NCBI GenBank assembly: GCA_000708835.1
Contig: DF237167.1
Location: 62,001 to 126,000, forward strand
DNA: 64,000 nt
Source of the DNA: Klebsormidium nitens
Lineage: Eukaryota > Plantae > Klebsormidiophyceae
Direction of reading: 5' to 3'
Under the pieces are notes generated by a model. That model did not search any database and was not told where the DNA came from. It saw only the letters and a program-made list of their open reading frames with translations. Shown here in pieces: positions 1 through 22,300 of this stretch (the stretch's first letter is position 1; each line of letters starts with the position of its first letter). The position numbers were made by a program, and so were the translations under genes.

Positions 1-1184
1 AACCCCTTGCTTAGTAAAGTTACTGGTATGCGTACCCTTGTTAGCGGTCGATCCAGGCTCTATAGCTACAGCCTACCAGTAGGTAGTGTGGTACAGATTT
101 TAGAACTGGACCACTGGACGGTACGTATTGGTGGAGAATCTGAAGGCTGAAGGGTAACGGTGCCGTACTTACGTACACTGTAGAGTACTCTTTGTACGTA
201 CCTTTTTATTTCCTAGAGAAGACTCGAGAGTCGAACGTACACCGTCCCCTACGCTTGGCTGAGCTCACTGGCAGCAAATGCGAAAAAGCACACGTCAACA
301 CGTGTCCCATACCACTTGTACACTTGCTCTTCATCGGCCCGGTGGAACCAGAAAATGGGCATGTGATTGGCATCGGCATCCTCGATATGTTGGGGCCAGG
401 AATCTAGCATTTGGCTAAGATTGTTTGAAGATCGAACAGGAAGGAATACGGCATATTGCAATTTACTGTACAAAATAAAGTCCCCTACAAGGGGCCCTCA
501 ACGGCTGTACGGTGCCAGGACCACTGAATGCGGGCCCCAAATGCGGTCCCTTGGGTGGAACACCCAAATTGACTAGTGGTCAAAGCCGACCCATTCCATC
601 GGTCTAAACCGGGAAAACCCAAATTCTTTAAATGTTAAGGACGATCAGCAGACACAATTAACGCGCGGACCTTCAGCGTGCGCCAAATTGACCACAATCT
701 AGAAAAAGTCGTGTAGCAGAACCATTTTCCTCCCGGCCTTGAGTGACGCTACATTCGACCCTACTCATTCAGTTGCGGTATTGGTCCGCAATGATGGCGC
801 TCCATAATGATGTAATACTCACAGATAGAGCATCCTATAAAGGACCTCGTCCGCCGCTCAGACCTATCGGATACGGGCAAGCACGATCTCCGTTATGGAT
901 TTTCCGTGTGAGGGATAAAGAGCAGTACATGACAAGCTGCATGGTGAAAGCTCCGCGGGGCGGCTACTCATCGAAGCTCAGACTTGCAGCAATTGACTGT
1001 ACGTTGTTTCATAGCATAGGCACATGAAATCAAACAGCTAGGGGGCAGGCTCCAAACTGCAGTACGCTTCTCCACCTTGAATTCAGGCTGCTTTTCTGAG
1101 ACATCTAGAAATTGTCTTGATAAACTGAGGGCATCGACCCTTCGCTTACAACCACCAAAGGAGTGATCCTCGATGTGTCATCGC

Positions 1185-4100
1185 TCATGCAGTCGATGGG
1201 TGCCACATGTCCAATCTTTCCAACCCCTTCCTCTTCTCTTCGGAGCCAGCCAGGTAATTAGCGTGGACCCAAAACATTTTGCCTTTATTCTTACTGAACC
1301 ACTCCTCCTTCATTCCGTACGCCCCACTGGGGAACCGAACCCTCGGCAGAAGCTGCACCGCAACCCCCCTGCCCGCCAAGATCTCCGGCGAGTTCGTCAC
1401 TTTGTTAAGGCTGACTTGGTCGTTCCCGTGGACCCTGCCGTTCTCCGTCTGGTTGTGTATCGCTTCTATCCACGTGTCGACGAATGTAATCCCGACCTGC
1501 GTAGGTTTCACGTGCATGAAACACGTGCACACATTCAGGCCCACAGTGTCCTTCCCGAGCTGCCGGGAGCCCTCCATGTCGCCCTCGGTGCTCGAGCCGT
1601 CGTCCGTCACGCTGACGTCATATGCTGAGGTCAGGATCTGGTGCGGGTCGCGCAGCCAGACGGTGTCGATGTCGCTGTAAATGACACTGAAGCCCATTCC
1701 GAGCAGGTCGCGCATGTGGTACGCGCGCAGCACCGTGAGGTCGTTGAAGGACTGCGAGCCAAAGGCGGCGAAGTCGTCGGAGAATTTGTCGGACTGCGCC
1801 TCGGATTGGAGGAGAATCGCATGGCCTGGCCAGTGCGCTTCCACGAAGTCGAACGTGGGCTGATCGATAGTGAATGCGATGACGCGGCTCGCCAAACCCA
1901 GGCGTTCCAGGCTCCCGACCCAGTTGCTGCACGAAAGAAAAGCGGGGGTTCTGTTGCAGCCGCGTAGGCATCCAGCTTAGGATTGTCTGCATAACACCAC
2001 TGTTGTGAAGAGGTTGATACTCCTTGCAGTTTCCTGTTTTGGTCCTCCAGAATTCTGTACAGTTTCTCAAAGTTTCTTGTAGTGACAGCTCAAGGCAGGT
2101 GAATGAGGCAGCGTTCTGTTCTTCCCAAGCGTTTGTGGCCCTTTTTGATATGAATCAAAGCGTGTTTCCGTGTCGTAGATCGTCATCGCTTTCGAGATTC
2201 TTTTGTGGCTGCATGAAACTTCAGCATCTTTGACGGCGTCAGTCTCCTCTTCATTGTCACTTTCCTCCGTCCACAAACCCAATTCGAAGTTTTCGGTTTT
2301 GTTCGCAACCTTCCTAACAGCATGAATTGAAAGCGCGAACCTTCCTAACAGCATGAATTGAAAGCTGAGCCCGGATGACTGAGATTTGAAGAAGTCTTTT
2401 CAGGTCACAGTCGCTGCATTTTCAAGGCAGCCTTTCGAAAAAAGAAGCAAACGTCAACAGATTGAAGGCAGCCTTTCGTAAAAAGAAGCAAACGTCGACA
2501 GATACCCCGTCGCCTTTGGCAGCCCCTTCGCAGAGCGGTCGACTTGAAGAATGGAATACCCGGGCGTGGCAAAAGGCCCGCTGCAGTCCGCTGCGGTAGG
2601 AACCTGGCAGCTAATCTCCGCACTACCTTGCATACAAAATGCATAGACGGTGCAACGGTGTTTGGATCTTTGGTCAAGGCTCAAGAAGCTTTTAAACTAG
2701 AGGCGATCAGTCCCACCTGTAAAAGTCATAGTATCCTTTGTTGACAGTGCATATGATGACGGTAGAGTTGACGGCAACGGACGTGGCGAGTTCCCGCAGC
2801 TTTTTCCTCTCCCGCTCTGCGTGGTCCGTGTCCGCTCCCGGGGCCTCTTTGGAGGGTTCAGAAGCGCTCGGTTCCGGAGCCTCTGTCAGGAAGTGCGACT
2901 CCGTGACCGAGTCGTCTTGCAAGACGTGCTCCACGTCGTTCCACCTCCGCTGCGGTTCCGCCAGTCCGTTGCAGAATTCCTCGACGGCAGCTCGGGGCAG
3001 GTCGCCGGCGGGCGTGAGGGGGATCCCCTTCTCCAGGAAGCTGTTCCGCCGGTGCTGCGCGTGCGGCGACGCCCACTCGTGCTCGAAGAAGTTGTACGGC
3101 AGCAGTGACGTCAGCGCGCACTGGCCCGGCTGGTCCTTGCACGAGAGGGGCCCCGTGAAGGAGCTCCAGGACCCGGCACTGTCGAGGTACGGGACCCCGT
3201 TCTTGAGATGCTTCGCGGAGAAGCTGCAGTAGAATTTGAACGCCCCGGCCGGCGAGGCACCCCGACCGGCGGTGGTGCCCACGTGGCCCAGCAAGCCGCC
3301 GCGCTCGTCGTGCCCGGTTGTGACGAAAGTTGCGTTGACCGGCGTCGGTTCTCCGAGCCCTGCCCGAAAGCAAATCCAATTGCAGTCAAAACGGGTTTGA
3401 CAATTAATTGATGGCCCAAACACCGTCGCCCACGTACGCTGGTAAAATCGGATGCGCACTCAGATGTTGTCAGGATGCTCTTATGTTCTCCTGCAACCTT
3501 TTTTTCAAACGTCGTCAGCCACGCAAAGCATTCTTTGTCCAACAACAAGCTTGGTGCTTCTCCTCGCCAAGCACTTCCTCTGTCGAGGTTGTTTGTGCAT
3601 CAAAGCCGACTTGCCCAAATTGCGGTCTTTGGAAGGAGAGCTTTGCCTGGAGAATCCAACAAAACATGTTGGCAGAAAAGTGGGCGCACACAAATTGAGC
3701 CAACTCGATCCACGAACTTCAGTCTAGTGTTAAGAAATACTAGGTTCCTGTTTTCATGATACTTCAAGGCCCTACCGGGAGTCCAACAAACGGAGCGGTC
3801 GTGTAAGGACTTCCAGGGCTGACTATGAAAGGATTTCTCTCCAGGACATGAGCGAAGGCAGCTCAGCAGTCGGACACGTGTGGCTGGAGGGTACGATTCA
3901 TGGATGCATACTCTTCGGCCCAACAAATATACAGTTGAACAGGGAACCTGACAACTCCGCCCTTTACCAACGCCCGCCAAACACATGGTCTCTGAAAAGC
4001 ACATTGGTGGCACTAACCATAAGATTTCGATGCAGCAAAAGCTGCTGCCAGGTGGCCGAACGTCGTGGCGACACGTGTTGGCGACACAGAGATGAATGCG

Positions 4101-7100
4101 TGAGAGGTTTCCGCGGCAAGGAAGAAGTCTACCACGGCCGCCCATCGAGGGTCTTTGCCCCAGTCGGAGGCCAAGTGATCTTCCTGAATCGGAAGTCGTT
4201 CCTCTTCGGGGTGGTGGATCTTGTAGAGTGTCGCATTGAAACGGATCACCTGACAATTGGAACACCTGGGTTTGTAAAATCATGCGTGTCTGTTAAGGCG
4301 TCTCAAAGTCCGCGTTGAGATCATAACGTTTGATTCGAAGGTCCTGTAACACAGAACGTATCTTTCAAGGATCCAAGACCGATCTCAGTTGAGAATGCGT
4401 GGACACACAAATCTTCTCGTTAGGTTCCTGAGTTCACGCCTGTAAGAAGCAAAGCGCAATGCTTTCTGTATTCTTCGCTTCTTCAAAAGGCTGGGCGACT
4501 CCTTTGCGTACACATCACTGAACGGAGAGAATGATCATTGACACTCGGAACAAAATAACCCTTGCCGCATTCACTCCCTAGAGCCCTACCTTTGCAATTC
4601 CTTGAAGCGATCGAGCGAACTTCAATCCGGCTGATGGCGTGTCGGTGACGAGCAGAACGGTTGGCAAAGTGGTGGTTCCATCTGTGAGCGGAGCAAATAT
4701 AGTGCTGAAAATGGTCGAGACTCGGAGGCCAAGAACTCAATCAATACAAGCAGAGGCCTGTATGCATGTTCCCGATCTCTTGGATGTGCAACTACGACTC
4801 TGATGCTCTTCAAACAAGGAGGGCCGTCGGAAATGATGACGACGAGAAATCTTTGCCAGCATTCTGAGCCAGGTACGGTGTGTCTCACTCCGGACTAAGT
4901 TTGTAACCAGTCTCTCACCAGTTTGACCCGCTTGCTGTAGTGCGTTCCGCGTGCAAACCGTCGCTTGCGCAACGGTGTCGGGGCAATCAAGCTGCATCAT
5001 CCGCATGTGTACGGACACGACAGGAGCGCCGTCCTTCAGAACCCTCGAGACGGCACGAGCTATAACCGGACGGGGGCTTATGAGCGCCCGCAGCGCTTCG
5101 CCTAGCAGGTTCGGCCGTGTATGGGGTAGCATGGGTTCTCCAAATAGTTCCGCTGCTTTCCTTCGAATATGCGGGTGCCTGCAAAATTAGCGCAGTTAGT
5201 CTCAAGGTCCACGTGTCTTCCTCTCCATGGTCGCTCCTAATGGAAGCCAGCTCGGCCGGAAAGTGGAATTGATAAAGAAAGGAGTCCCGCTGAAAGCAGA
5301 CCTGCGCGTCGACGCGAATCCAACGGTTTTTGTCAGACGCCTTTCGGCTAGGTAAGCAAAGGGATCGTGTCCCACAGGAGCATCCGCCATCAGGCATTTC
5401 GGGTGCCTTGTAAACCTAAGGGCTTCTTTTTGGTGCACCAGTCATGAATTCCAAAGTGCGTCGTGAGTTTTGTTGCTTACGTTTTAGCACTTCAGATTTG
5501 GCTCCAGTATCAAGCTTGTCTAGCTGCCCAGTCTTCAACCAGCTCAGCTGTGAGAGGTCTGAGAAGAACAAATTTGGCATGCGAGACGTTTTGGTTGGGG
5601 CAGAATAAACCAACACATGCAGTCATTCGGAAGTGCACTAAAAGCTTGTTTTCGTGCCGTGCTAATTTGGTAAAAAGCAACAACAATCTCATTCAAGGTC
5701 TCTACAGCTCTCAGTTGATTGGGACTTCGCAATTCTCAGGTTGGCTCTGCAGCCGTTCAGAAATGCTGATTATCATTGAGACGTACGTGTGGGCTCTTCT
5801 ACCACTTTACTGCTGATAGAACGTGTCCGAGTCGCCACCCAACTGGAGGATCTCGCATACAAGCTGACGGTCCTGCTGCCGTCCAAAGACACCCCCCTGA
5901 ACCAGTCCTCTTGGAGAAGAAATTCAAACCCGGCCTGTTGGCATCTCCCGCTTTTTCACGAAACGACCCTAGCTGCGTTCACGGACGACTGCTTAACCGT
6001 CTCGGTTAAAAAGGAGAAGCTTTTCGGGGAGATATTTCGAAAACCTGCCGCCGGTGCAAGGCTGTAAACGAAACTCACCGACTTCGAGTGATCAGAGCCA
6101 GGTTGCCCATGTCACCCAAGTCGGTCACTTGAATCAGCGGCACGTCCCACTTCGTCAGATCGTCGCACATAAAGGAGACCTGCGCAGTGTGTGCGTGCAC
6201 GTCTCCGGCCATGTTGCGCAGCTGCCGGACAACTAGAGGGCGGCCGAATTTGGAGGCACACCCGTTGGTCGCCCACAGCTGCTTCAGGCGGTCCATGCTG
6301 AACAGACGCGCGTTGAACTCGATGAATGCCTCCGCTGAGCGGCCGCCGTACGTGCCGTCTGCCGTTTCGAGCTCACCCTTGTAGTCTGGCTGAGAGGACC
6401 TACGTATACGTGAAGAAAAAGGTCATAGTTCAGATTGAGTTGGCGCTTGTGCTCGTTCTGCTTGCGTTGGAAAAAGCATGAGACGACTCCATTGATGGAA
6501 GTCACATCTCTAGGGTTGGGTATTCGTGCCTAAAAATCGACGGCTTCTGGTTAAGAACAGGAAGGCACCCCACACTCCATCAGTGGTTTATTTGAGACTG
6601 CATCAGGAGAGCAGAAAGAACTGAATCTGCTCTGCCTTTGTTCGCTTCGAGGAGCAAAAGCCCCTGCATAGAGCGAGAGCAACGACTACAAGAGTGCCAG
6701 CAGTACGAGAGGTGCAGCAGAGCAGATTCAGGAGACGCTAAATTGTAGTACGACAGCCTCGAGTAGCTGAGTGCCTGTAGACACTAGCGGAGACGAAAGG
6801 CTCACAGCAGGAAGAAATTTACTTGCGATCAAAGCTCCCCTGCAACTGCCCAATAAGCATGACAACTTAAGTCTATCTGAATCTCTGCAGGGCACGTTCA
6901 TCTTACCTCTCTTCACCCCATATGACGGTTCGATTCAAAATCATCCCTAGGATGAGGGGCCCGATTCCACCTTCGTAGAACCCGTTTCCAAGGCCATTCT
7001 TTAGGTGGTTGCTATGGCCAAAGACAAACTTGTGCTGGCAGAACTCCCGCGGTTCTAGCTTGGCTATCTTGTCGGCGGCTGCACAGATCGGAAATGGGTA

Positions 7101-8731
7101 TGCTAAAGTTCCCCAGTAGCAGCTTGGATTCGGAGGACAGCTGCGCACGATGGTTTCCGGCTGGAAAGGATCAGAAAGAGTGTTCATGTACATGCGATAC
7201 TCGAGTTGAAATTGTTTCGCGACTGCTAAGCAGCTAGGTTGACTGGTGCCTTTGTGAACTTTGTACAGAAGGTCAATCGTAGCTCAGTCGTTTTGCAGCA
7301 TAACAAGCACGCGACGCACTTATGCCTGGCCAGTCCGCGGCTGTGCACAAACCGGGACACATGTGAAGCCATTTCGATGACAATGGATCACTTTGGAGAT
7401 CTGGGTTACTTTTGGTCTCCTCCTTGGAAAGTCAAGACAGCTGCAGACTCCCAATGGCTTCGTGCTTGCAATAAGCTTCATGGAGAAAGCAGACACCACC
7501 GCGACGTCACTCAGAAGTTTGGGAATAACAATGATGAACGTGCTCCAATCTGCTTTGGTGCGGTTGAGTTTGTAGATGCATTGGGCCTGGCTTACCCCAG
7601 CTCCTCTGTGCAGGTTTGCAAACGAGCACCTATGAGGATGTATAATGCCGAAGCTTACCATGGAGGTCCAGGAAAGTTTCGATCCGGCTCCGAACGCCGA
7701 GGCTTGGGCAACGGACATCAGCTGTCATGCTTGCGCCCATTTCCTCCGCTGTTGCACATGTGTGCAACGTGTTTGGGGCTGAAGAGTTGCCTGCAATAGC
7801 TGCCAAGCGCGCCTCCTTGCGGCGCACCATGGCATCATTCAGACTCGCCCACTGATCCTCGGGGAGACCCTTGTTGAACAAGTCTCCCGGGCAACCCTCA
7901 AATTCTGCAACCTTCTCCCCTGAGTGAAAAGCCTGGAGACGCCGCCCGTTGAAAGAGGGCTGCTTCACGCTGCCAGGGTCAGCTGTGCACCGCTGACCAG
8001 CGGTTGAGACGTGGACCAACCTCCCCGGATGAAGAGCTGGACAGAAAGAAGTGCCAGTTACGAACTTTCTGGGTTCAGTTGACGCAACTGACCATCACCT
8101 TCGCCGACACTGGTGTGTGCTTGATGCAGACTTGTCAGATGTGACCGGCAGCAGAATGCGGGAGCGGAGTATTTTCTGCTGTTTTTAAGGAAGGGATTGT
8201 CCAACTCACACATTGGGTGTCCTTCTGCAACCTCAGAAAGAACTCAGACAGTATTGAGCAGCTTGTTGACGCTTGCTGATAACGTGACAATCTCGTTTGC
8301 AAGGTCTACTGTTCATAGCTGTGAATGTACAATCGCCTTTCAAAACTTTCAGCAGAGTCGTTAACAGTGGCGTCTGTCTACTTGAATCTGACTCCAGCTC
8401 TCATGAAGCAGAGATTGGCGTTGCTGCTCGTGTAAGTCGCTCTCGATATCTTATCTGGATGATTCCACCTCCTCTACCATTTGAAACACATTGAGGGATG
8501 CGGGATTTGCGCGATTGAGCTGGACTTACCAAGACAAACGCACAGAACCAGAAGAAAGGCAACTCCCATCGGGAAGTGGTGGCGGGGGCTGCAAACCCAT
8601 CCTGTGGCCCAGGCCCCAGCCTTACCAAGGTTGCGAGGGAACGCCCTCTTAGGACCGCCCTTACAACTGGCAGACCTGCCGCCAGCAGAGACTACCGCTT
8701 CCAATAGGCGCGTATCATCGACATCCATCAT
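1185..8731 (-). CDS. Bifunctional type II membrane glycosyltransferase: At3g56750-like (putative fucosyltransferase-like) domain fused to a GT77/Nucleotid_trans (PF03407-like) domain; 9 exons, ~1013 aa
   Basis: Exons 8731-8530, 8036-7659, 7078-6907, 6399-6079, 5178-4919, 4681-4590, 4249-4018, 3359-2717, 1926-1185. All introns are GT..AG, phases match, and the total is 3042 nt. N-terminal TM segment MGVAFLLVLCVCL. At3g56750-family motifs as I recall them: CATAEEMG, EFCQHKFVFG..GLGN, KQLWATNGC, RPNLLGEALRALISP, VSVHMRM, DWGKDPRWAAVVDFFLA, FTGPLSCKDQPGQCALT. GT77-like motifs: TVIICTVNKGYYDFYSNW, YSDIDTVWLRDP (DxD), GNDQVSLN, LPRVRFPSG, HANY. Confidence 0.88.
2307..2503. repeat. Two short intronic tandem duplications (31-bp and 41-bp periods)
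   Basis: AACCTTCCTAACAGCATGAATTGAAAGC at 2307 and 2338; AAGGCAGCCTTTCG(A/T)AAAAAGAAGCAAACGTC at 2424 and 2465. Confidence 0.9.
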
Positions 8732-9416
8732 CGCTGCTCACAGCTTCTACGAAGCTCAGATCCCGTGGCCAATCCTCAGAGCGGGCTCACCAACTATTGG
8801 GGGTCAGCTCCAGCTCTCTCATTTGCGCTCACATCTCCCGCTCTGAAAGCTCAAATCACGCAAGGATGAAGATTCAATCACCCTGTAAGGTCAGCTGAAG
8901 GCGTAAGCGTGGATTGGTTTGCAGCCCACTAGACATTTAGCAAAGCCTGCAATCTTTTAGGCAGAGTGTCATGGCTGCGTAACGTGATCAGTCTCAGTGC
9001 GGCAGCAGGAGCTAGTCTGTGCAGGATGTCCTGGTTCGGTGTCGCGTCGGGCTCCCCGGCGCTCATTTGACAAAAGCCGATTCAGGACTGAGCACTTCAA
9101 ATTGGGTAGGTGATACATATCAAGCGTCTTGACTCTTGACAAGTCCTCTAGACCGCTCATGATAAGGTGTGCCGGTACACTCCATTTTTCAGGACAATTT
9201 CAGGTGATTTCACCGCATGATATGCCCGATGCTGTGCACGTGACGTTGCTGTGATGGCTGTACGAGCTCGATTGGGCCAGATGGGCTGGCACCTATTAAC
9301 TCAAAACATTCGGGTGTCTGTGTAACACTACCGTACCGAACCTGAGCAAGACCTTAGCAAAGCTGACACCGACAGTGACCGGACCTGCGTCGTTCTCCAA
9401 CCTGCTCGAGCATGAT

Positions 9417-9746
9417 NNNNNNNNNNNNNNNNNNNNNNNNNNNNNNNNNNNNNNNNNNNNNNNNNNNNNNNNNNNNNNNNNNNNNNNNNNNNNNNNNNNN
9501 NNNNNNNNNNNNNNNNNNNNNNNNNNNNNNNNNNNNNNNNNNNNNNNNNNNNNNNNNNNNNNNNNNNNNNNNNNNNNNNNNNNNNNNNNNNNNNNNNNNN
9601 NNNNNNNNNNNNNNNNNNNNNNNNNNNNNNNNNNNNNNNNNNNNNNNNNNNNNNNNNNNNNNNNNNNNNNNNNNNNNNNNNNNNNNNNNNNNNNNNNNNN
9701 NNNNNNNNNNNNNNNNNNNNNNNNNNNNNNNNNNNNNNNNNNNNNT
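9417..9746. other. Assembly gap (330 N)
   Basis: Run of N in the sequence. Confidence 1.
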
Positions 9747-11692
9747 TCTGGTGAATGATTCACCAGAACCCGGAAATACATTATCTGACGGTCACAAATG
9801 CCCAAACATACTATGGCCTGTGGCGCGCGCACAATTGGATATGTTGGGGGCTTCCGTTGATATTATCGGCCGGCACTGCAGAAGTACTTAGTGCGTCGAC
9901 GAACCGGGCAAGACGACCATGCAGTCTATTAACGGCCGGAATCTAGGTACTACGGTAGGTAGGTACCTAATTAATCAGCCTGGCGTACACATGGGGGTTC
10001 AATGCCGCCAAGACGGTTCTGCGGTTCCGACGACTGAGTGGAGCTTGCGCCGTTGATGTATGATTGAACGGAACGACAACTTACGCGCGCGCGAGAAAGT
10101 GGTTGTGTGGATCACCTCGACTCGGAGAGCTCCCGAACTTTCTTGTATTACGTTCGATCATTCTCGTCGCGGAACTTAATCGTTCTGTCGTACTAGCACT
10201 TCTGCAGGTTTAGTGTACGTCATTGGCGACCATTGAACCCTTCAGACTCCTAGAAGGTTCTGCAACAGTCAAAACAGTGAAGACCTCGGCCAATACCGGT
10301 GGCTAGGTACATGAGGCTCAGTAGCTAGGGTACGTTTGGACTGGTAAGCAAGCTGGATAAGCTGGTAGTACAGTGGGGATACAGTAGAACAGGAAAATCC
10401 TGAAAATCAGCGAAGACGCGGTCAATTTCAGAAGAATATTGATCGCCATCACGTGCACTGCGCATGCAGAAAGCATGCTCAGGATAATCAGGATCGATGA
10501 TATGGAAACTAAGTTGGATTGTCATCCCTCGTAGTACCGGATGCACGAGTGATCGGTTCGTCACTGGTACTACGTAGTATACTGCCAGTACTGGTACTAC
10601 TTTGCTTAGTAGGCGGCCGCCGCCGGCAGCCTGCATGCCGTCTGCAGCAACCTCGGATCTCTTAGTGCTGCCAGTAGGCATTCTAGTACCTTTCTAGATC
10701 GTTACGGATGCATTGTCAGCTTGGCATGCGCCAAATGTCCGGCAATTTGGGATAGTCCAGATACGTACTTAGGCTCAGATCCTGCAGATCCAAGCCCGAC
10801 GGAATCAGGGAGGAATTCTGACCTTTCGAGCTCCAATTGTCTTTCAGGGAGTGATGCATGTGCTCAGTAGCGACATTCAGGATATCAGTAAGGAGATAAT
10901 ATGTGACAAAGATTTGGCCAGTTGCGCCAGTTCAATACTGCGGCATTGGGTGCGAGTGAAGCTTTTCCAAGACTCTATTCGGGCTCTGTTTATCGTGATC
11001 ATGCTAGTGCGAGTGAGTAGGATTGGCGCTGGCAAACGGGAGACTGCAGAGCCGCCTGCATTCAGACGCATTGCACTGACTGGCGGCACATGCCAAGAGA
11101 CCGGTAGTTTGGGCACTGAGGGCCCTCTTGCATGAGTCTTTCAAGGCTCCATGTCAGAAACGCCAACTCCAATCAGAGCAAGTGCTAGCTACATGCAGAG
11201 TGGAACCAATTCTACTGTGGAAGATTTGCACTCCTAAGCTATAAACCTGCCTTTCCGTAGCATACGCCACAAGCCACTGCTACTTGAGAACCTAAGAGGT
11301 GAAATTTGATTACTGTGTGACTTCACTGCAGAGCCTCTGCAAGGCACCCTTCGGTTCAAGCGCTCCTAACAATATCTGGATGGCAGTCGCTTATGCAGGC
11401 TGAGTTTCCTAGGCGCCCTCGCTAGTCACAGCGAGGATCTATCCCTCCCAAAATAGTGCACCTGAATACGTATCTCGCAGCTGCTCAAATCATATTCAAC
11501 TTATGAACCATCTGAGAAGCAGACAATCAAACGTTTCGTGGGAAATTGATTAGGGCGTTCAAAGCTGCATTTATGATACCAATTTAGTAGCGCCAACGCC
11601 GCCCAACCCACGATGTGGGCTGCTTTGAGTTTATAAGCTCAGGACGGACCTTTGTCATCAGCCTGCCAAAACCTCTCTACTTTGGGTTCCCA

Positions 11693-14054
11693 ATGCCGCC
11701 ACCAAGCGCAAATCCTGTCCGGCCCCATAGAACCTCCTTGAAGAATTGGTTTCGGAAAACCTTTGTCTCCCCACTGCTTTTCCTGGGTTTGGTAACCCTG
11801 ATCTCCGGTGCTTTTGGTGGGTCATGGGGTTTCACCCTTGCACGACGGGCGAGTCACGGAGTGCGGGAGGACGGCACGCAGAGGAGCGAGCTTCAATCAG
11901 ATCTAGAAGGGACTGTTGGTGCAGCGTCACTTCTCCAGAGCGTCAAATTGAACGCACAATTTCGCACAATCCTGATGCGTCCTCAGAAGCATGGGAAACT
12001 TACAGAAGCCAAGAAGAGCAGCCGAAGTCAGAAGCTAAGTATTGAAACTGATGAGGATCGCGGCGAGCTTTTAGGGACGGGGGCAGCTGCGGAGAGCGGC
12101 CTAAGAGTGCAAGTGATTGAGGGCGGGCTCAAGGGATCCCTCCACGAAGAACCGGGATTCGTGCGCTGGCGCGACTCCGTCATTCTCCTCGGTTCTTTCA
12201 ACGTTAGCAGAGACTATGCCCCGGTCTTGTCAGCCACCCACCATGAGCTCCTAGCGATTGGCAGCACCAGAACCACAATCTACAATCTGACGACCGGTGA
12301 CGTCACAATTGGGCCGGATTTCCCCGTGCTCATGCACCACCCGGCCGCAGCAATTTCCCCCGGGGGGGTGGTCCATCTGGTCGGAAGTGCCGACTGGAGT
12401 GACATGAGTAGTCCAAACAACGACGCGTTTCATTTCACTTGGGATGTCGAGGGGGGTGCAACGGACTGGATTGACAGGGCGCGGGTTTTGGGGGCGGCGG
12501 GGGGGTTCAGCTGCGAGTTTCTCGGGGAGTTTATGTACTGCTGCGGAGGGGGAAGACGGCTTCAGGAACGGACGGGGGATCTCCTTCGGGTCTATAATCC
12601 AGCAAACGACAGCTGGTCGGAGGCTGCCCCGCTGCCTGAGGTGCGTTAAATGTACTTGATTGTTTCAAAGGTGCTATGTATGCGTATTGCCGGGACCCCA
12701 CAGAAATTCAAGCTGACTCTGGTGGTGCAAGTCATTTTGAAGCCTTGTTGCAACGGTATGTATTAATTCTGTCTCTGAGCTTTTGGGACCTCAACGTACA
12801 GCATAGCACCTGAATTGAGAAGCTCGTAGAGCAATGGCAGTGGATGAATTACGAGCCCATCAGTTCACACGAGTCTCGCACTTTTAATGAGAGCTTCCGG
12901 ACAATTACGAATTTTTTCTGCATTGCGTATTCAGACCTCAAGGCCAGATTGTGAAAGTGGCACAACTTCTCTTTTGAACTTTGCAGATACTCAACATATC
13001 ACATTTGTGCAGCGCTGGGTCCCTCCACGAGCTTTTGCAAAGCTTGTCGATATTGCTTGATACACATGATCTGCTATCTCTGACTCCTGGGCAACATCGT
13101 TCTCGTCGCAAGGATTCACGTCGAATCTAAGGACCGCCTTTCAGCAGTCTCCTAAATGCCTCTGAATGCCAGTCAACCCAGTTCATCGAAGTGCTTCCCG
13201 GTTTGAATGCTTTGCGTCTTTTTTTCCTGCAGCCAGCGGACCACGTCACACTGCTCGTCTATGAAGGCGAACTCTGGGGAGTCGGGGGCGCGTCAAGTTT
13301 CAACCCTAGATATGGAGCCTATAACCCAAAATTCACGTCACACGACCACTACCGGCACTCCATCACCCAGCTCGCGGTCTATAACCCGAGCACTAACCAA
13401 TGGTTGGTTAAGCAACCACTGCCGTACTCCAGGGCGGCCCCGATTGTCGCTTTAGTTCAGCGCCCGGGGAAACGGGCGAGCATGTTAATGGGAGGGGGCG
13501 AGGTGTATCTGGGTTCGAACGGGATGGCGGTGACGTCACTGTCCGAGTACGACTTTGGAGAAGACGTCTGGTGAGTAAAACTTGGGTTCAGTCACCTTTG
13601 TGAAGTACGAAGAGCGCCTTTCTGGTTCAGCTTCGGAATCCGATTTTACCCGATGCTACTTCCTGCCAAGGCCTTCGACGTGTACACCTTCTTTGCCTGT
13701 AATTCTTCAAAGCGATTACACAGAGGTTCCGCTTGCATTCGTATCATTAAAGTTTCCTCCACGCTCCAAAACATGTGTCCTGCGCGCAGGTTCTGCCACG
13801 TGGATCCGCTTCCATTTCCGGTCTTCGGAGCGGGTTCCGCCCTCTGGAATGACAGATGGTACATCCTCGGGGGTGGGGAAAGCTACAATCTGGCGGCCAC
13901 GGACCGCGTCATGATTGTCGACGTGGCCAATCTGCCTACCCCAGAGCCGTGCGCCGGTCAGCAGGGGAGACAGGAAAAGACGTGGTGGCAAACTAGAGCC
14001 GCGAGCTGGCAGAAAACCTTTCCCTACCCCAAGCAATTTTTGGAGAAGCGGTAA
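11693..14054 (+). CDS. Kelch-repeat (beta-propeller) protein with N-terminal membrane anchor, ~516 aa, 3 exons
   Basis: Exons 11693-12640, 13233-13570, 13790-14054 with consistent phases. TM segment FVSPLLFLGLVTLISGAFGG. Kelch signatures: MYCCGGG..LRVYNPANDSWSEAAPLP, LWGVGG..VYNPSTNQWLVKQPLP, WYILGGG. Confidence 0.85.
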
Positions 14055-19300: not shown

Positions 19301-22300
19301 CAAGTAAAACGTCATCGTCTTTCCGCAAGATGAGAACGTCCCCAAAGGGCGACTGCTTTCCCAAGTTCTCCGTTTTCCTATGGCAGGGAAAACGGAACGT
19401 CCATCAGGCTTCGCCCGAGTCGTGCGTGTATAGCCACTTCTAACGCTGCAAGCGTCGATGCGGAACAAGCGGTGTGCTGCCACGCTTCAAAGGCAAATAT
19501 TACAGAAGAAGCACGTGGGGGAGCACACTTGTAAAGTTCACATCGGTCGCCCTAAGACGAGCATATACGCAGATCCGCCGTTTAGGCATAATGCAAATCC
19601 GCGGAATAAAGTCAGTGTACTGCAAGAGCGGGCGGAGATCAGCCGGAGCCGTCAGCTCACCAGCCACGATCGAGTTCCACGCCTGCTGGAACTGCTGCTG
19701 CAACGTCTTCTTCTCGTCCGTCTCCCCGTAGTTCTCGGGCCACGTCTTCAGAATGACGCCGCACCCGATCGCCAGGAAACACGCGGCGGTGTCAAACGGC
19801 GCCACAGGCCCGAGGTTAAGATCCACAACTAGGAAGTTGGCGAGGAGCCCCGCAAGAATTGCGACCAGTCCATTGCCCAGGAAGATAGCTTTGGAGAACG
19901 TGAGGGACAGCCACTGGGGCTCAAAATTGTGCTGCGGAGAAGAGCGATACGTTCGTTTCGCACCTTCAGCGGGTTACTTGACATTCTCCAAGTGATCCTT
20001 CATGGCAGTCTATTGTTTAGAGAGTGTTAGGCAACTACAGGCGTCGATCAGAAGGGAGCTAGCAGTCGCAACAAGCGGAACCACTTCCAATGAGAAGTGG
20101 CTTCATTGTGAACCTTTGTAAGCTTGATCGTGGTTCTCCTCAATGACAGTCCTTGGATCAGCTTCCTTAGGCGGTCCGAAACGGTCCGCAACAAGATCGA
20201 GGAAGTATCCTCCGTGCTTACGTTCTCACCCATCTCGATCTAAGGAAAATTGGATCGCTGGTGAACGCTCATCAATACCGTCAACGGCCCTTGTGATACG
20301 AGAGGGTCCTTTCAAAAGCAGCGGAGAACCAAAGCGCGTCTAGATTGAAGCGAGTCTGGTCAAACTAGGCATGGATTCGTGGGTGGCCCATGTAGCTGTC
20401 CCAGTAACCTTCAAGGCTGCAGATTTGATTTTCCTTTACTGCGAAACAGCAGGTGAGACTGCGGCGGAATGAAAGAGTCGGTTGGAGCTTTTTGGGCGCT
20501 GACTGGGGATGCATCTGCTCGACTTTACCCAGGGGAGAAGATGCCGCGCTGGGCCCAAGCAGATGTTTGGAGGGACACTTCCACACTGTTATTGCGGACC
20601 AAGTATATAGCTGACGGCGAGGATTGCAGGCTTGTAACGATCTTGCAACTCTTCGGAACAATACCTTACGGCCATGTGACTTTCTTTGACTGGCGCACGT
20701 AGATTTTTCCTTTGCAAACCTTTCAGCGCACCAGTCCAACGAGCACAAAACCGGGTTGCATACCCTGGTCCACCAACCCTACAATTGCTTCTGGTGGGCC
20801 TGGAAACTTTGTAAGATGAACATGATCTATCTTGACCTGCATCTGGACCCAGCAAAAGCCCCAGTGCAGCTTCACATACCTTGAAGTGCTCCGCGACCAA
20901 CCATGATTCGAAAGCCGAGAAGAGCAGGCTCGTTGCGATTCCCCCCAGGATGCGACCGACCAATAGGAATGCGAACCTTGGGGAGTGCTTCGTCCAGCAG
21001 CTGAGTATGTAGGAGACACAGTAGAGGACGCTTGCGAGCCTCCGACCGCTGCAGAGGGGCAGAAGAAAGTTTGCTTGCTTAAACAATTGAGCGACGGTTC
21101 CAGGCGAACTATGGCCGCTAGAACACCTTACTCAACCTACTACGGAGACAAATTTCATATCTCGGTGCACGTGTTCTGGTAAAAACAGAATCTGTTGGGC
21201 AAGCAGTGGAGCACAGCTTACATAAAGACTTTCAATGTGAAGAGGCTAGCTTGTCTTCCAGACACTGTTCGCAGGAGACACAGAGGCTCTCGACGGCATA
21301 CCTCAGGGTTTCAGCAGTTTTTGATGCTTTGGAAAAGAAACACTTTTTGAGCTCATTTGCATACGATGGGGGTTCCAAAGACAAAGAAGAGCGACCCTAC
21401 GCTTTCAACAGACAAGCGTGACCTGTGACCTTGCTCTATCGGAAACATGCAGATGAGACCTGATCAGAAGTCTCTGCTGAGTTCATTCACGAGATTTTTT
21501 GAATGGGGCCAGAGATGCGGAGACTCACTGCTTGTCTGCCAAGGACCCCACAATTGTTCCGAATACCATCGACGATCCAAACCCTGCAATGAAGAGCCGT
21601 CCAATATCCCCCTGGTCGTATCCATAGTGCTGATATAATGCATAGACGTAAGGGCCCTGTAGCCAGTCGCCAGCTGCACGCATGAAAATTCAAGTAAGGT
21701 TCCCCTTTCACCAAAAACCGCTCAGGCCTCCAACCCCTCTGGTCCACATATACCACCCCTCTGGTCCATATAACCACCCATGTAAGCCTTTTGTGGAATC
21801 AAAGGTGGCCAGAATGGAAGTCAGTCGGTAAAATTGGAGCAATTGCATTGAGTTTGTTGCTCGCAGATGAGCTCTCAGACTTTTCTGCGAAGGCCATCTA
21901 GACGAACTTCGGCTAGAGCTGCAGAGCATGGTGCCAAAACTTGCAAGAAAGAACTGCAAGCGTCTTTGCAGGGTCTGTTCGTACCAGCAAAGTGCAAAGA
22001 GGACCCAGACACACAGATAGTGCGAGCTATGCTCACGGTTGATGATGCGACATAATGCCGAGAAGACTCAGGACATTCGCCAATAAGAATGGCAACTAAC
22101 CAAGCTGAGCTGAGCAGCCAGAGCAGTTGTTATTGCCGGTGAAGTATGTAGCTAGTAGCTTGAAGAGGCACTTACCCATCATCAGGCTGTATACAAGAAG
22201 GTAGTTGTTCTTGAAAGCTTCAAAGCTGGGGATCGTGACAAACGTGTCCTTCTGCCCTTTTGACAACTCTGAGACACCGCAGATTGCCGCCAGAGCCCCA

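What the first reader, a model, noticed from the sequence alone, without database searches (positions are those of the whole stretch)
1185..8731. Two-domain glycosyltransferase fusion: At3g56750-like domain joined to a GT77 domain within a single exon
Seen in sequence: exon 3359-2717 runs without a stop from the At3g56750-like C-terminal motif (FTGPLSCKDQPGQCALT) through an acidic/Pro linker (EAPEPSASEPSKEAPGADTD) into the GT77 start (NSTVIICTVNKGYYDFY). The fusion is therefore not an artefact of joining neighbouring genes. One TM anchor serves both domains. Established: GT77 contains RRA arabinosyltransferases and RGXT xylosyltransferases; RGXT transfers xylose onto fucose in RG-II. Inference: the fusion may perform two sequential transfers and gives a functional clue to an uncharacterised plant family.
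Basis: partly seen in the sequence, partly recalled or inferred. Interest (0 to 1): 0.75.

Follow-up and report, generated by a model that had tools for sequence, protein, structure and literature searches.

The report
Two-domain algal glycosyltransferase fusion gene
A green alga related to land plants makes one membrane protein that joins an uncharacterised fucosyltransferase-like enzyme, kept by all land plants, to a second sugar-transferring enzyme (GT77), which hints that the two work on the same sugar chain.

Summary
A nine-exon minus-strand gene (8731..1185, 3042-nt CDS, about 1013 aa) has an exon (3359..2717) that runs without a stop from the end of one glycosyltransferase-like domain, through a 65-residue acidic/Pro-rich linker, into the first strand of a GT77 domain. 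Spliced RNA contigs from three samples cover this exon without gaps. Single contigs join it to upstream and downstream exons.

The N-terminal domain is a complete Pfam DUF7810 (PF25102). A model of a relative matches only fucosyltransferase-superfamily structures (FUT8 Z 17.5, AtFUT1 16.2, NodZ 15.6; next fold Z 7). The HxR motif is kept. The C-terminal domain is PF03407/GT77 with DxD.

The label "At3g56750-like" is probably wrong. That protein (403 aa) cannot hold this ~480-residue domain. Length, anchor position and best template fit At3g26950 (548 aa).

I found no other DUF7810-GT77 fusion: none among 32 relatives in 1.84 billion representative proteins, and none in 11 genomic loci of the nearest relatives. 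Sequential two-step transfer is inferred, not shown. The GT77 subclade and any RG-II link are unresolved.

The scan noted other glycosyltransferase fusions in this genome, but not this one. The joined spliced protein was not searched or folded.

The parts
8530..8731 (-). Exon 1 (inferred): ATG at 8731, cytosolic tail, and the only membrane-anchor-like segment at 8531-8575
   Evidence: ORF frame and consensus donor G|GTAAGT at 8530/8529. Kyte-Doolittle 15-residue maximum is 2.67 here, against 1.65 or less in every other exon. The splice to exon 2 was not seen in reads.
7659..8036 (-). Exon 2: stem region and start of DUF7810 (conserved CxTxEEMG at 7735-7758)
   Evidence: The 3' end is fixed by the RNA loose end at 7079, which reads into ...CTCCAT at 7660. 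The 5' end (AG 8038-8037) is inferred. PF25102 profile 4-38.
6907..7078 (-). Exon 3: DUF7810, G-x-G-N / NRT block (6975-6995)
   Evidence: RNA joint 6397|6905 (cut +2) and AG/GT contexts. PF25102 profile 40-91, 28.2 bits.
6079..6399 (-). Exon 4: DUF7810 N-terminal subdomain
   Evidence: RNA joints 5177|6078 and 6397|6905. PF25102 profile 108-177, 40.8 bits.
4919..5178 (-). Exon 5: DUF7810 with fucosyltransferase motif I, H-M-R at 5001-5009
   Evidence: RNA joints. PF25102 profile 189-273, 66.4 bits. The H and R of HxR are identical to columns nearly invariant in the family.
4590..4681 (-). Exon 6: DUF7810 motif II block (LLVTDTPS, 4632-4655)
   Evidence: RNA joints 4247|4588 and 4681|4919. It aligns to the conserved VSDTPS block.
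4018..4249 (-). Exon 7: DUF7810 donor-binding blocks (DWG..PRW..VDFFLA at 4115-4165; RVATTF at 4058-4075)
   Evidence: RNA joints. PF25102 profile 304-379, 58 bits. 69 bits to the family HMM.
2717..3359 (-). Exon 8, the junction exon: DUF7810 C-terminal subdomain (to about 2965), 65-residue acidic/Pro-rich linker (2770-2964), first strand of GT77 (2719-2769)
   Evidence: No stop in frame. Covered end to end by contigs of X2 and X3. PF25102 profile 386-480, 58.2 bits.
1185..1926 (-). Exon 9: body of the GT77 (PF03407) domain, DxD (D-I-D) at 1665-1673, H-x-N..G...K block at 1233-1268, stop TGA 1187-1185
   Evidence: PF03407 115.9 bits, profile 3-206 of 208. These motifs are invariant in an alignment with four metagenomic relatives. 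RNA joint 1926|2717.

Best explanation
This is one real, transcribed gene for a membrane protein of about 1013 residues.

SHOWN:
- Its parts, in order: a short tail; the single hydrophobic anchor (about residues 53-69); a stem of about 90 residues; a complete DUF7810 domain (about 160-685); a 65-residue acidic/Pro-rich linker; a GT77 domain (about 750-1013).
- The DUF7810 family has the fold of the fucosyltransferase superfamily (GT23/GT37/GT65/GT68).
- The DUF7810 domain keeps the HxR donor-phosphate motif.
- The GT77 domain keeps DxD.

INFERRED:
- The protein is a type II Golgi enzyme with both catalytic domains in the lumen, on one anchor.
- Both domains are active and act one after the other on the same acceptor glycan.
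- The likeliest order is this. The inverting FucT-like domain adds a 6-deoxyhexose, most simply L-fucose from GDP-fucose. The retaining GT77 domain then adds an alpha-linked sugar to it.
- That order matches two characterised GT77 enzymes. RGXT adds alpha-1,3-xylose to fucose in RG-II. Dictyostelium AgtA adds alpha-1,3-galactose after a fucose-adding enzyme.

My confidence in the architecture is about 0.9, in both domains being active about 0.6, and in the fucose-then-GT77 order about 0.3.
For: Gene model and transcript. A single RNA contig bridges exons 5-9, and the junction exon is continuous.

Domains. PF25102 is collinear from profile position 4 to 480; PF03407 gives 115.9 bits.

Integrity of the first domain: 99 of 152 columns conserved at 90% or more in 40 family members are identical here. 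These include H and R of HxR, DWG..PRW, DFFLA, R..TT and all eight conserved Cys.

Fold of the family: AF2 model of the relative P0006:445-984 has pLDDT 78 and pTM 0.85. Foldseek's top hits are AtFUT1, FUT8, NodZ and POFUT1. VIA gives Z 17.5 / 16.2 / 15.6 / 13.5 / 12.5 to FUT8, AtFUT1, NodZ, POFUT1 and POFUT2, then drops to 7.3.

GT77 motifs are invariant against four distant relatives.

Only one anchor-like segment exists.

Precedent: AgtA is a GT77 alpha-3-GalT acting after a bifunctional Fuc-adding enzyme, and consecutive enzymes of that pathway are often fused in protists. RGXT enzymes are alpha-3-XylTs of RG-II.
Against: No activity, donor or acceptor is known for any DUF7810 protein.

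A FucT-type fold does not prove fucose transfer. From my own knowledge, plant PF10250/GT106 relatives transfer rhamnose.

Some columns invariant in the family are changed here (WW to FF, GWGHVW to SAG-SW).

The GT77 subclade is unknown. Other GT77 enzymes (RRA, XEG113) are beta-arabinofuranosyltransferases acting on Hyp-arabinosides.

The fusion was found in no other organism, so nothing shows that selection keeps the two halves together.

In Arabidopsis, At3g26950 is not tightly co-expressed with RGXT4 (mutual rank 1496).

The RNA evidence is assembled contigs from one study. Contigs cannot show transcript ends.
Confidence: 0.6

Rival explanations
1. One enzyme plus one helper. Only one of the two domains is catalytic. 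The other has become a carbohydrate-binding or scaffolding module that positions the substrate.
For: Several positions invariant in the DUF7810 family are changed in the C-terminal subdomain.
Against: The motifs that matter for donor binding are intact in both halves: HxR, motif II and III blocks, DxD and the H-x-N block. Overall, 65% of highly conserved family columns are identical.
Confidence: 0.2
2. Accidental lineage-specific fusion of two neighbouring Golgi glycosyltransferase genes. The activities are independent and serve different glycans, and the fusion carries no pathway information.
For: No second example of the architecture in any searched collection. Scan notes report several other multi-domain glycosyltransferase fusions in this genome, which suggests a general tendency. 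There is no tight RGXT4 co-expression for At3g26950.
Against: The second domain lost its own anchor and stem and depends on the first for targeting. The reading frame, linker and both motif sets are intact, and the gene is expressed. Fusions of consecutive enzymes are common.
Confidence: 0.15
3. Artefact or separate products. The genome or RNA assembly is chimeric, or the two halves are normally made from separate transcripts through an internal promoter or polyadenylation site.
For: Only assembled contigs were available, from one study, and they cannot show ends. In run X1 the junction exon is covered by three overlapping contigs rather than one. The window's own protein was not met in the representative library.
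Against: Contigs from two further samples cover 2717-3358 in one piece with zero mismatches and continue across spliced junctions on both sides. Word depth is even across the exon. A GT77 half made alone would lack any anchor or signal.
Confidence: 0.05

Closest known systems
Stand-alone plant DUF7810 (PF25102) proteins, probably the At3g26950 type
   Same: Full-length collinear match to the same Pfam model, the same conserved Cys pattern, HxR and donor-binding blocks, and an N-terminal single anchor.
   Different: Plant and Spirogloea members end about 10-40 residues after the domain and carry no second catalytic domain. The alga's copy is divergent (30-45% identity in blocks) and continues into GT77.
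Fucosyltransferase superfamily (FUT8/NodZ GT23, AtFUT1 GT37, POFUT1 GT65, POFUT2 GT68)
   Same: Fold of the family model (Z 12.5-17.5) and an HxR motif at the start of the donor-binding half.
   Different: No sequence-level match to any solved structure, even with a profile. About 12% identity in structural alignments. Donor sugar unknown.
GT77 enzymes: RGXT1-4 (RG-II alpha-1,3-xylosyltransferases), RRA1-3 and XEG113 (extensin beta-arabinofuranosyltransferases), Dictyostelium AgtA
   Same: PF03407 match over the whole model, plus the DxD and C-terminal H-x-N..G...K blocks. Like AgtA, the GT77 domain is fused to another module.
   Different: The plant enzymes are stand-alone type II proteins with their own anchor. 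AgtA is cytoplasmic and fused to a WD40 propeller. Here the partner is a second glycosyltransferase. The subclade is not assigned. The word search found no relative of 135-430 aa at E<=1e-5, and the best metagenomic relatives are 24-28% identical.
Two-domain Golgi glycosyltransferases (LARGE1 GT8+GT49, EXT1/2 GT47+GT64) and the Dictyostelium bifunctional Gal/Fuc transferase of Skp1
   Same: One polypeptide with two different catalytic folds that make adjacent linkages. For LARGE and EXT this is my own knowledge; the Skp1 enzyme and the habit of fusing consecutive enzymes are.
   Different: Different families. Those enzymes have proven activities, and LARGE/EXT build repeating polymers. Nothing here shows polymerisation.

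Membership tests
Pfam PF25102 (DUF7810) | Match to the family HMM above the gathering score (27 bits), over the whole model | tested here: met
   Exon by exon: 18, 28.2, 40.8, 66.4, 58 and 58.2 bits, collinear from profile position 4 to 480 of 490. The joined protein was not scanned.
Pfam PF25102 (DUF7810) | Conserved residues of the family (Cys pattern, HxR, DWG..PRW..DFFLA, R..TT, GPLSC..Q..QC) | tested here: met
   99 of 152 columns conserved at 90% or more are identical. WW to FF and GWGHVW to SAG-SW are exceptions.
   No At3g56750 sequence could be obtained. It is 403 aa with an anchor at 17-37 and best template POFUT1, too short for this ~480-residue domain. Angiosperm DUF7810 proteins are 540-570 aa, like At3g26950 (548 aa, template NodZ).
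Fucosyltransferase superfamily (GT-B variant of GT23/37/65/68) | Fold | tested here: met
   Tested on a model of the relative P0006:445-984, not on the alga's own protein. Z is 17.5 to FUT8, 16.2 to AtFUT1 and 15.6 to NodZ; unrelated GT-B folds reach Z 7.3 or less.
Fucosyltransferase superfamily (GT-B variant of GT23/37/65/68) | Motif I HxR with the catalytic arginine | tested here: met
   H-M-R at 5001-5009 aligns to the family's nearly invariant H and R. I did not confirm residue-level superposition on the FUT8/POFUT1 arginine.
Fucosyltransferase superfamily (GT-B variant of GT23/37/65/68) | Use of GDP-fucose | not testable with these tools
   Needs an enzyme assay.
CAZy GT77 / Pfam PF03407 | HMM match above the gathering score (22 bits) | tested here: met
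   115.9 bits, E 3e-33, profile 3-206 of 208. 28 of the 30 nearest Atlas clusters carry PF03407.
CAZy GT77 / Pfam PF03407 | DxD metal/donor motif | tested here: met
   YSDIDTVW is invariant in the alignment with four distant relatives; D-I-D lies at 1665-1673.
CAZy GT77 / Pfam PF03407 | GT-A fold | tested here: inconclusive
   The AF2 model of exon 9 alone with a 5-row alignment had pLDDT 46.5 and was not used. No solved structure matches by sequence or profile.
GT77 subclades (RGXT, RRA, XEG113, others) | Phylogenetic placement with named members | not tested
An Atlas neighbour named 'At4g15970' is only a lead.
Bifunctional two-domain glycosyltransferases | Two catalytic domains in one translated polypeptide | tested here: met
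   One reading frame and one spliced RNA contig across both domains.
Bifunctional two-domain glycosyltransferases | Both domains active, on successive steps | not testable with these tools
   Only motif integrity could be checked.

The most novel reading that the evidence does not exclude
The fusion is a Rosetta stone. On this reading, the conserved and so far orphan streptophyte DUF7810 enzyme (probably At3g26950 in Arabidopsis) makes the sugar, most simply the fucose, that a GT77 enzyme then decorates. In land plants DUF7810 would then be one of the missing fucosyltransferases of a GT77-dependent glycan, such as RG-II side chain A, where RGXT puts xylose on fucose.
Probability: 0.12. Interest if true: 0.85.

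Novelty: new variant of a known kind. Interest (0 to 1): 0.5.

Why it matters
DUF7810 is kept from Klebsormidium-grade algae to angiosperms. It was listed in 2012 among fucosyltransferase-like candidates for pectin RG-II synthesis, if it is At3g26950. I found no functional study of it.

A natural fusion to a GT77 domain gives a concrete, testable idea of what it works with. It also offers a single soluble construct in which both activities and their product could be assayed together.

The clue is weak for now, because the fusion is seen in one organism only. This genome also seems to fuse glycosyltransferases often.

Tried and rejected
1. Word search with the GT77 exon: no relative of 135-430 aa at E<=1e-5, so no named GT77 sequences and no subclade tree.

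2. Atlas feature search with the junction exon: only scores below 0.85 to unrelated clusters. Discarded.

3. PDB sequence and profile searches for both domains: nothing meaningful. The CDK5RAP2 hits at E 0.03 fall on the charged linker and were rejected as compositional.

4. AF2 of exon 9 alone: pLDDT 46.5, so I ran no fold search on it.

5. Metagenome scan with the GT77 exon: four loci at 24-28% identity, none with DUF7810 nearby.

6. Two word searches seeded with Mangifera and Tarenaya DUF7810 proteins, meant to bring up the Arabidopsis member by name. No Arabidopsis, Capsella or Camelina row was listed, although Brassica, Thlaspi and others were. The At3g26950 assignment therefore stays indirect, and the gap is unexplained.

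7. Intron tandem repeats: not copies of the exon ends by eye, so not the 'echo' architecture noted elsewhere in this window.

8. The joined spliced protein was not sent to any search or fold tool. All protein work was done exon by exon, by reference.

Full report
**Observation**

The minus strand of 1185-8731 carries a multi-exon gene. They lie at 3109-3159, 2824-2883 and 2719-2769.

The exon proper is 3359..2717. It is bounded by AG at 3361-3360 and GT at 2716-2715. The next exon begins at 1926, after AG 1928-1927. The split codon ag|c keeps the frame into the GT77 body.

The nine-exon model is:

| Exon | Coordinates |
|---|---|
| E1 | 8731-8530 |
| E2 | 8036-7659 |
| E3 | 7078-6907 |
| E4 | 6399-6079 |
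| E5 | 5178-4919 |
| E6 | 4681-4590 |
| E7 | 4249-4018 |
| E8 | 3359-2717 |
| E9 | 1926-1185 |

All boundaries checked (E3-E9) are canonical AG...GT, and E1 has a consensus donor. The exons sum to 3042 nt, about 1013 codons, with every phase fitting.

**Transcript evidence**

Four runs held about a third of the sampled words of 1150-7149. That is what the exon share of this stretch predicts. I laid three of them, X1-X3.

Their contigs skip exactly the predicted introns: 1926|2717, 3358/9|4017/8, 4247/9|4588/90, 4681|4919, 5177/8|6078/9 and 6397/9|6905/7. The ends are CT..AC on the plus strand, which is GT..AG on the gene's strand. These records are therefore spliced RNA, although the run type is only guessed in the index.

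- One contig of X3 (1998 nt) runs from the 3' end through E9, E8, E7, E6 and into E5.
- One contig of X2 does the same from 1601.
- One contig of X1 joins E8 to E7, E5 and E4.
- E8 is covered end to end, without gaps or differences, in X2 and X3.
- A loose end at 7079 reads into the sequence just before the donor at 7659. This fixes the E2|E3 joint.

Limits of this evidence:
- These are contigs from one study, so they cannot show transcript ends.
- The E1|E2 joint and the start codon lay outside the 6,000 bases I could lay.

**Domains**

Scanned exon by exon, PF25102 (DUF7810, 490 positions) is matched collinearly from position 4 to 480 across E2-E8. PF03407 (Nucleotid_trans, CAZy GT77) is matched over 3-206 of 208 in E9, at 115.9 bits.

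Only one segment looks like a membrane anchor. It is the end of E1 (8531-8575; hydropathy 2.67, against 1.65 or less everywhere else). A stretch of 65 residues, acidic and rich in Pro, Ala and Ser, lies between the last DUF7810 block and the first GT77 strand (2770-2964).

**What DUF7810 is**

A search of 1.84 billion representative proteins with E8 gave only 32 hits, with at most 41% identity. Those with a source name come from land plants (Mangifera, Ginkgo, Adiantum, Tanacetum, Ensete) and the zygnematophyte Spirogloea. The Atlas cluster of this fold has 287 members, all streptophytes where the phylum is known. Angiosperm members are 540-570 aa 'uncharacterized' or 'transmembrane' proteins.

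I aligned 40 members (A1) and modelled the relative P0006:445-984 (pLDDT 78, pTM 0.85). The best Foldseek matches in the PDB are Arabidopsis FUT1, FUT8, NodZ and POFUT1.

The second aligner gives:

| Structure | Z |
|---|---|
| FUT8 | 17.5 |
| AtFUT1 | 16.2 |
| NodZ | 15.6 |
| POFUT1 | 13.5 |
| POFUT2 | 12.5 |
| Next, unrelated GT-B folds | 7.3 or less |

. There is no sequence-level match to any solved structure.

The family is therefore a member, by fold, of the fucosyltransferase superfamily. This is what fold recognition suggested in 2012 for a set of Arabidopsis orphans.

The alga's exons, aligned separately to the family HMM, keep the HxR of motif I, the VSDTPS-like block, DWG..PRW..VDFFLA, R-V-x-T-T and the GPLSC..Q..QC block. 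In all, 99 of 152 columns conserved at 90% or more are identical, including all eight conserved cysteines. The changes include WW to FF and GWGHVW to SAG-SW.

**Which Arabidopsis gene**

I could not obtain that sequence. The published data give At3g56750 as 403 aa with an anchor at 17-37 and best template POFUT1. They give At3g26950 as 548 aa with an anchor at 12-32 and best template NodZ.

A domain that spans about 480 residues after a stem cannot fit in 403 aa. Three further points fit At3g26950:
- The Brassicaceae DUF7810 proteins are about 550 aa, with an anchor near residues 14-34.
- The family model is closer to FUT8/NodZ than to POFUT1.
- At3g26950 is annotated 'transmembrane protein', the name several DUF7810 entries carry.

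I therefore think the label should be At3g26950-type. This is indirect. It is odd that no Arabidopsis row appeared in two searches that did list other Brassicaceae.

**The GT77 half**

YSDIDTVW (DxD), a conserved Cys, LP..FP.G and H-x-N..G...K are invariant in an alignment with four metagenomic relatives of only 24-28% identity. The word search found no relative of 135-430 aa at E<=1e-5, so this domain is divergent.

Atlas neighbours are PF03407 clusters of haptophytes, streptophytes ('At4g15970') and giant viruses. That is a lead only.

I could not place the domain among the RGXT, RRA and XEG113 clades. A model of E9 alone was too poor to use.

**Is the fusion found elsewhere?**

- None of the ten hits that I scanned with Pfam (all five with more than 60 residues after the match, and the five longest) has PF03407.
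- None of the DUF7810 rows listed does either.
- Eleven genomic loci carrying the nearest C-terminal DUF7810 exons have no GT77-like sequence within reach, even at E<=1.
- In the closest locus (L005), the next gene is an rRNA adenine dimethylase on the other strand.
- The four GT77 loci from metagenomes have no DUF7810.

The architecture is therefore so far unique to this alga. One caveat: the window's own protein was not met in the library either, so coverage of this lineage is incomplete.

Earlier notes of this scan name the genome Klebsormidium nitens and report other multi-domain glycosyltransferase fusions in it. I did not test either point.

**Mechanism**

Shown: one frame, one spliced RNA, two complete domains with intact donor motifs, and one anchor.

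Inferred: a type II Golgi protein whose two luminal domains act in succession.

The most economical order is FucT-like first, then GT77. Two characterised GT77 enzymes act right at or after a fucose. RGXT enzymes are alpha-3-xylosyltransferases of RG-II. Dictyostelium AgtA is an alpha-3-galactosyltransferase that extends the Fuc-Gal disaccharide made by a bifunctional enzyme, in a pathway whose consecutive enzymes are often fused.

Points against over-reading this:
- Other GT77 enzymes are beta-arabinofuranosyltransferases of extensins.
- A FucT fold does not prove fucose transfer.
- RG-II is regarded as land-plant specific, although RGXT orthologues are reported in charophytes.
- At3g26950 is not tightly co-expressed with RGXT4 (mutual rank 1496).

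**Verdict**

The family label should be corrected to DUF7810 (probably At3g26950-type), and the function is still untested.

This is a new domain combination within the known kind 'two-domain glycosyltransferase'. It is of moderate interest as a handle on an orphan plant family.

Noticed in passing
window 2307-2365 and 2424-2503: Two perfect or near-perfect tandem duplications (31 bp x1.9, 41 bp x2.0) inside intron 8 of the gene. By eye they are not copies of the flanking exon ends, unlike the 'echo' introns noted by the scan at 48-62 kb of this window.
   Followed up: partly
window about 9385-9750: Run of N (assembly gap) about 650 bp upstream of the predicted start codon. The promoter and 5' UTR of the gene may be incomplete.
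   Followed up: no
window 11615-14054 (+): Neighbouring gene with a predicted N-terminal hydrophobic segment and a weak Kelch motif (PF01344, E 0.0016, below the gathering score). Possibly a Kelch-repeat membrane protein.
   Followed up: partly
window 20589-21086 (-): Exon of an MFS_5 (PF05631) transporter-like gene, E 6e-23.
   Followed up: partly
P0028 (Spirogloea muscicola, 1245 aa) and P0006 (Logan, 984 aa): DUF7810 proteins with a 450-720-residue, highly acidic, low-complexity extension between the anchor and the catalytic domain, with no Pfam match. This is a different way of enlarging the same enzyme.
   Followed up: partly
No Arabidopsis, Capsella or Camelina DUF7810 row was listed, although Brassica, Thlaspi, Eruca, Sinapis and Cochlearia rows were. 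This is either a quirk of the candidate filter or a real absence in that lineage. It bears on whether At3g26950 is the family's Arabidopsis member.
   Followed up: no
Fold search atlas row 3: A cluster of 912-aa proteins combines TOD1/MUCI70 (PF04765) with an O-FucT (PF10250) domain. This is another glycosyltransferase-like fusion involving a FucT-type fold.
   Followed up: no
L005:1934-4731: The nearest relative of the alga's DUF7810 C-terminal exon (41% identity) sits in a gene-dense 9.8-kb contig of an unidentified phototroph (ferredoxin-thioredoxin reductase, Spt4 and RrnaAD nearby). It has few introns and no GT77.
   Followed up: partly
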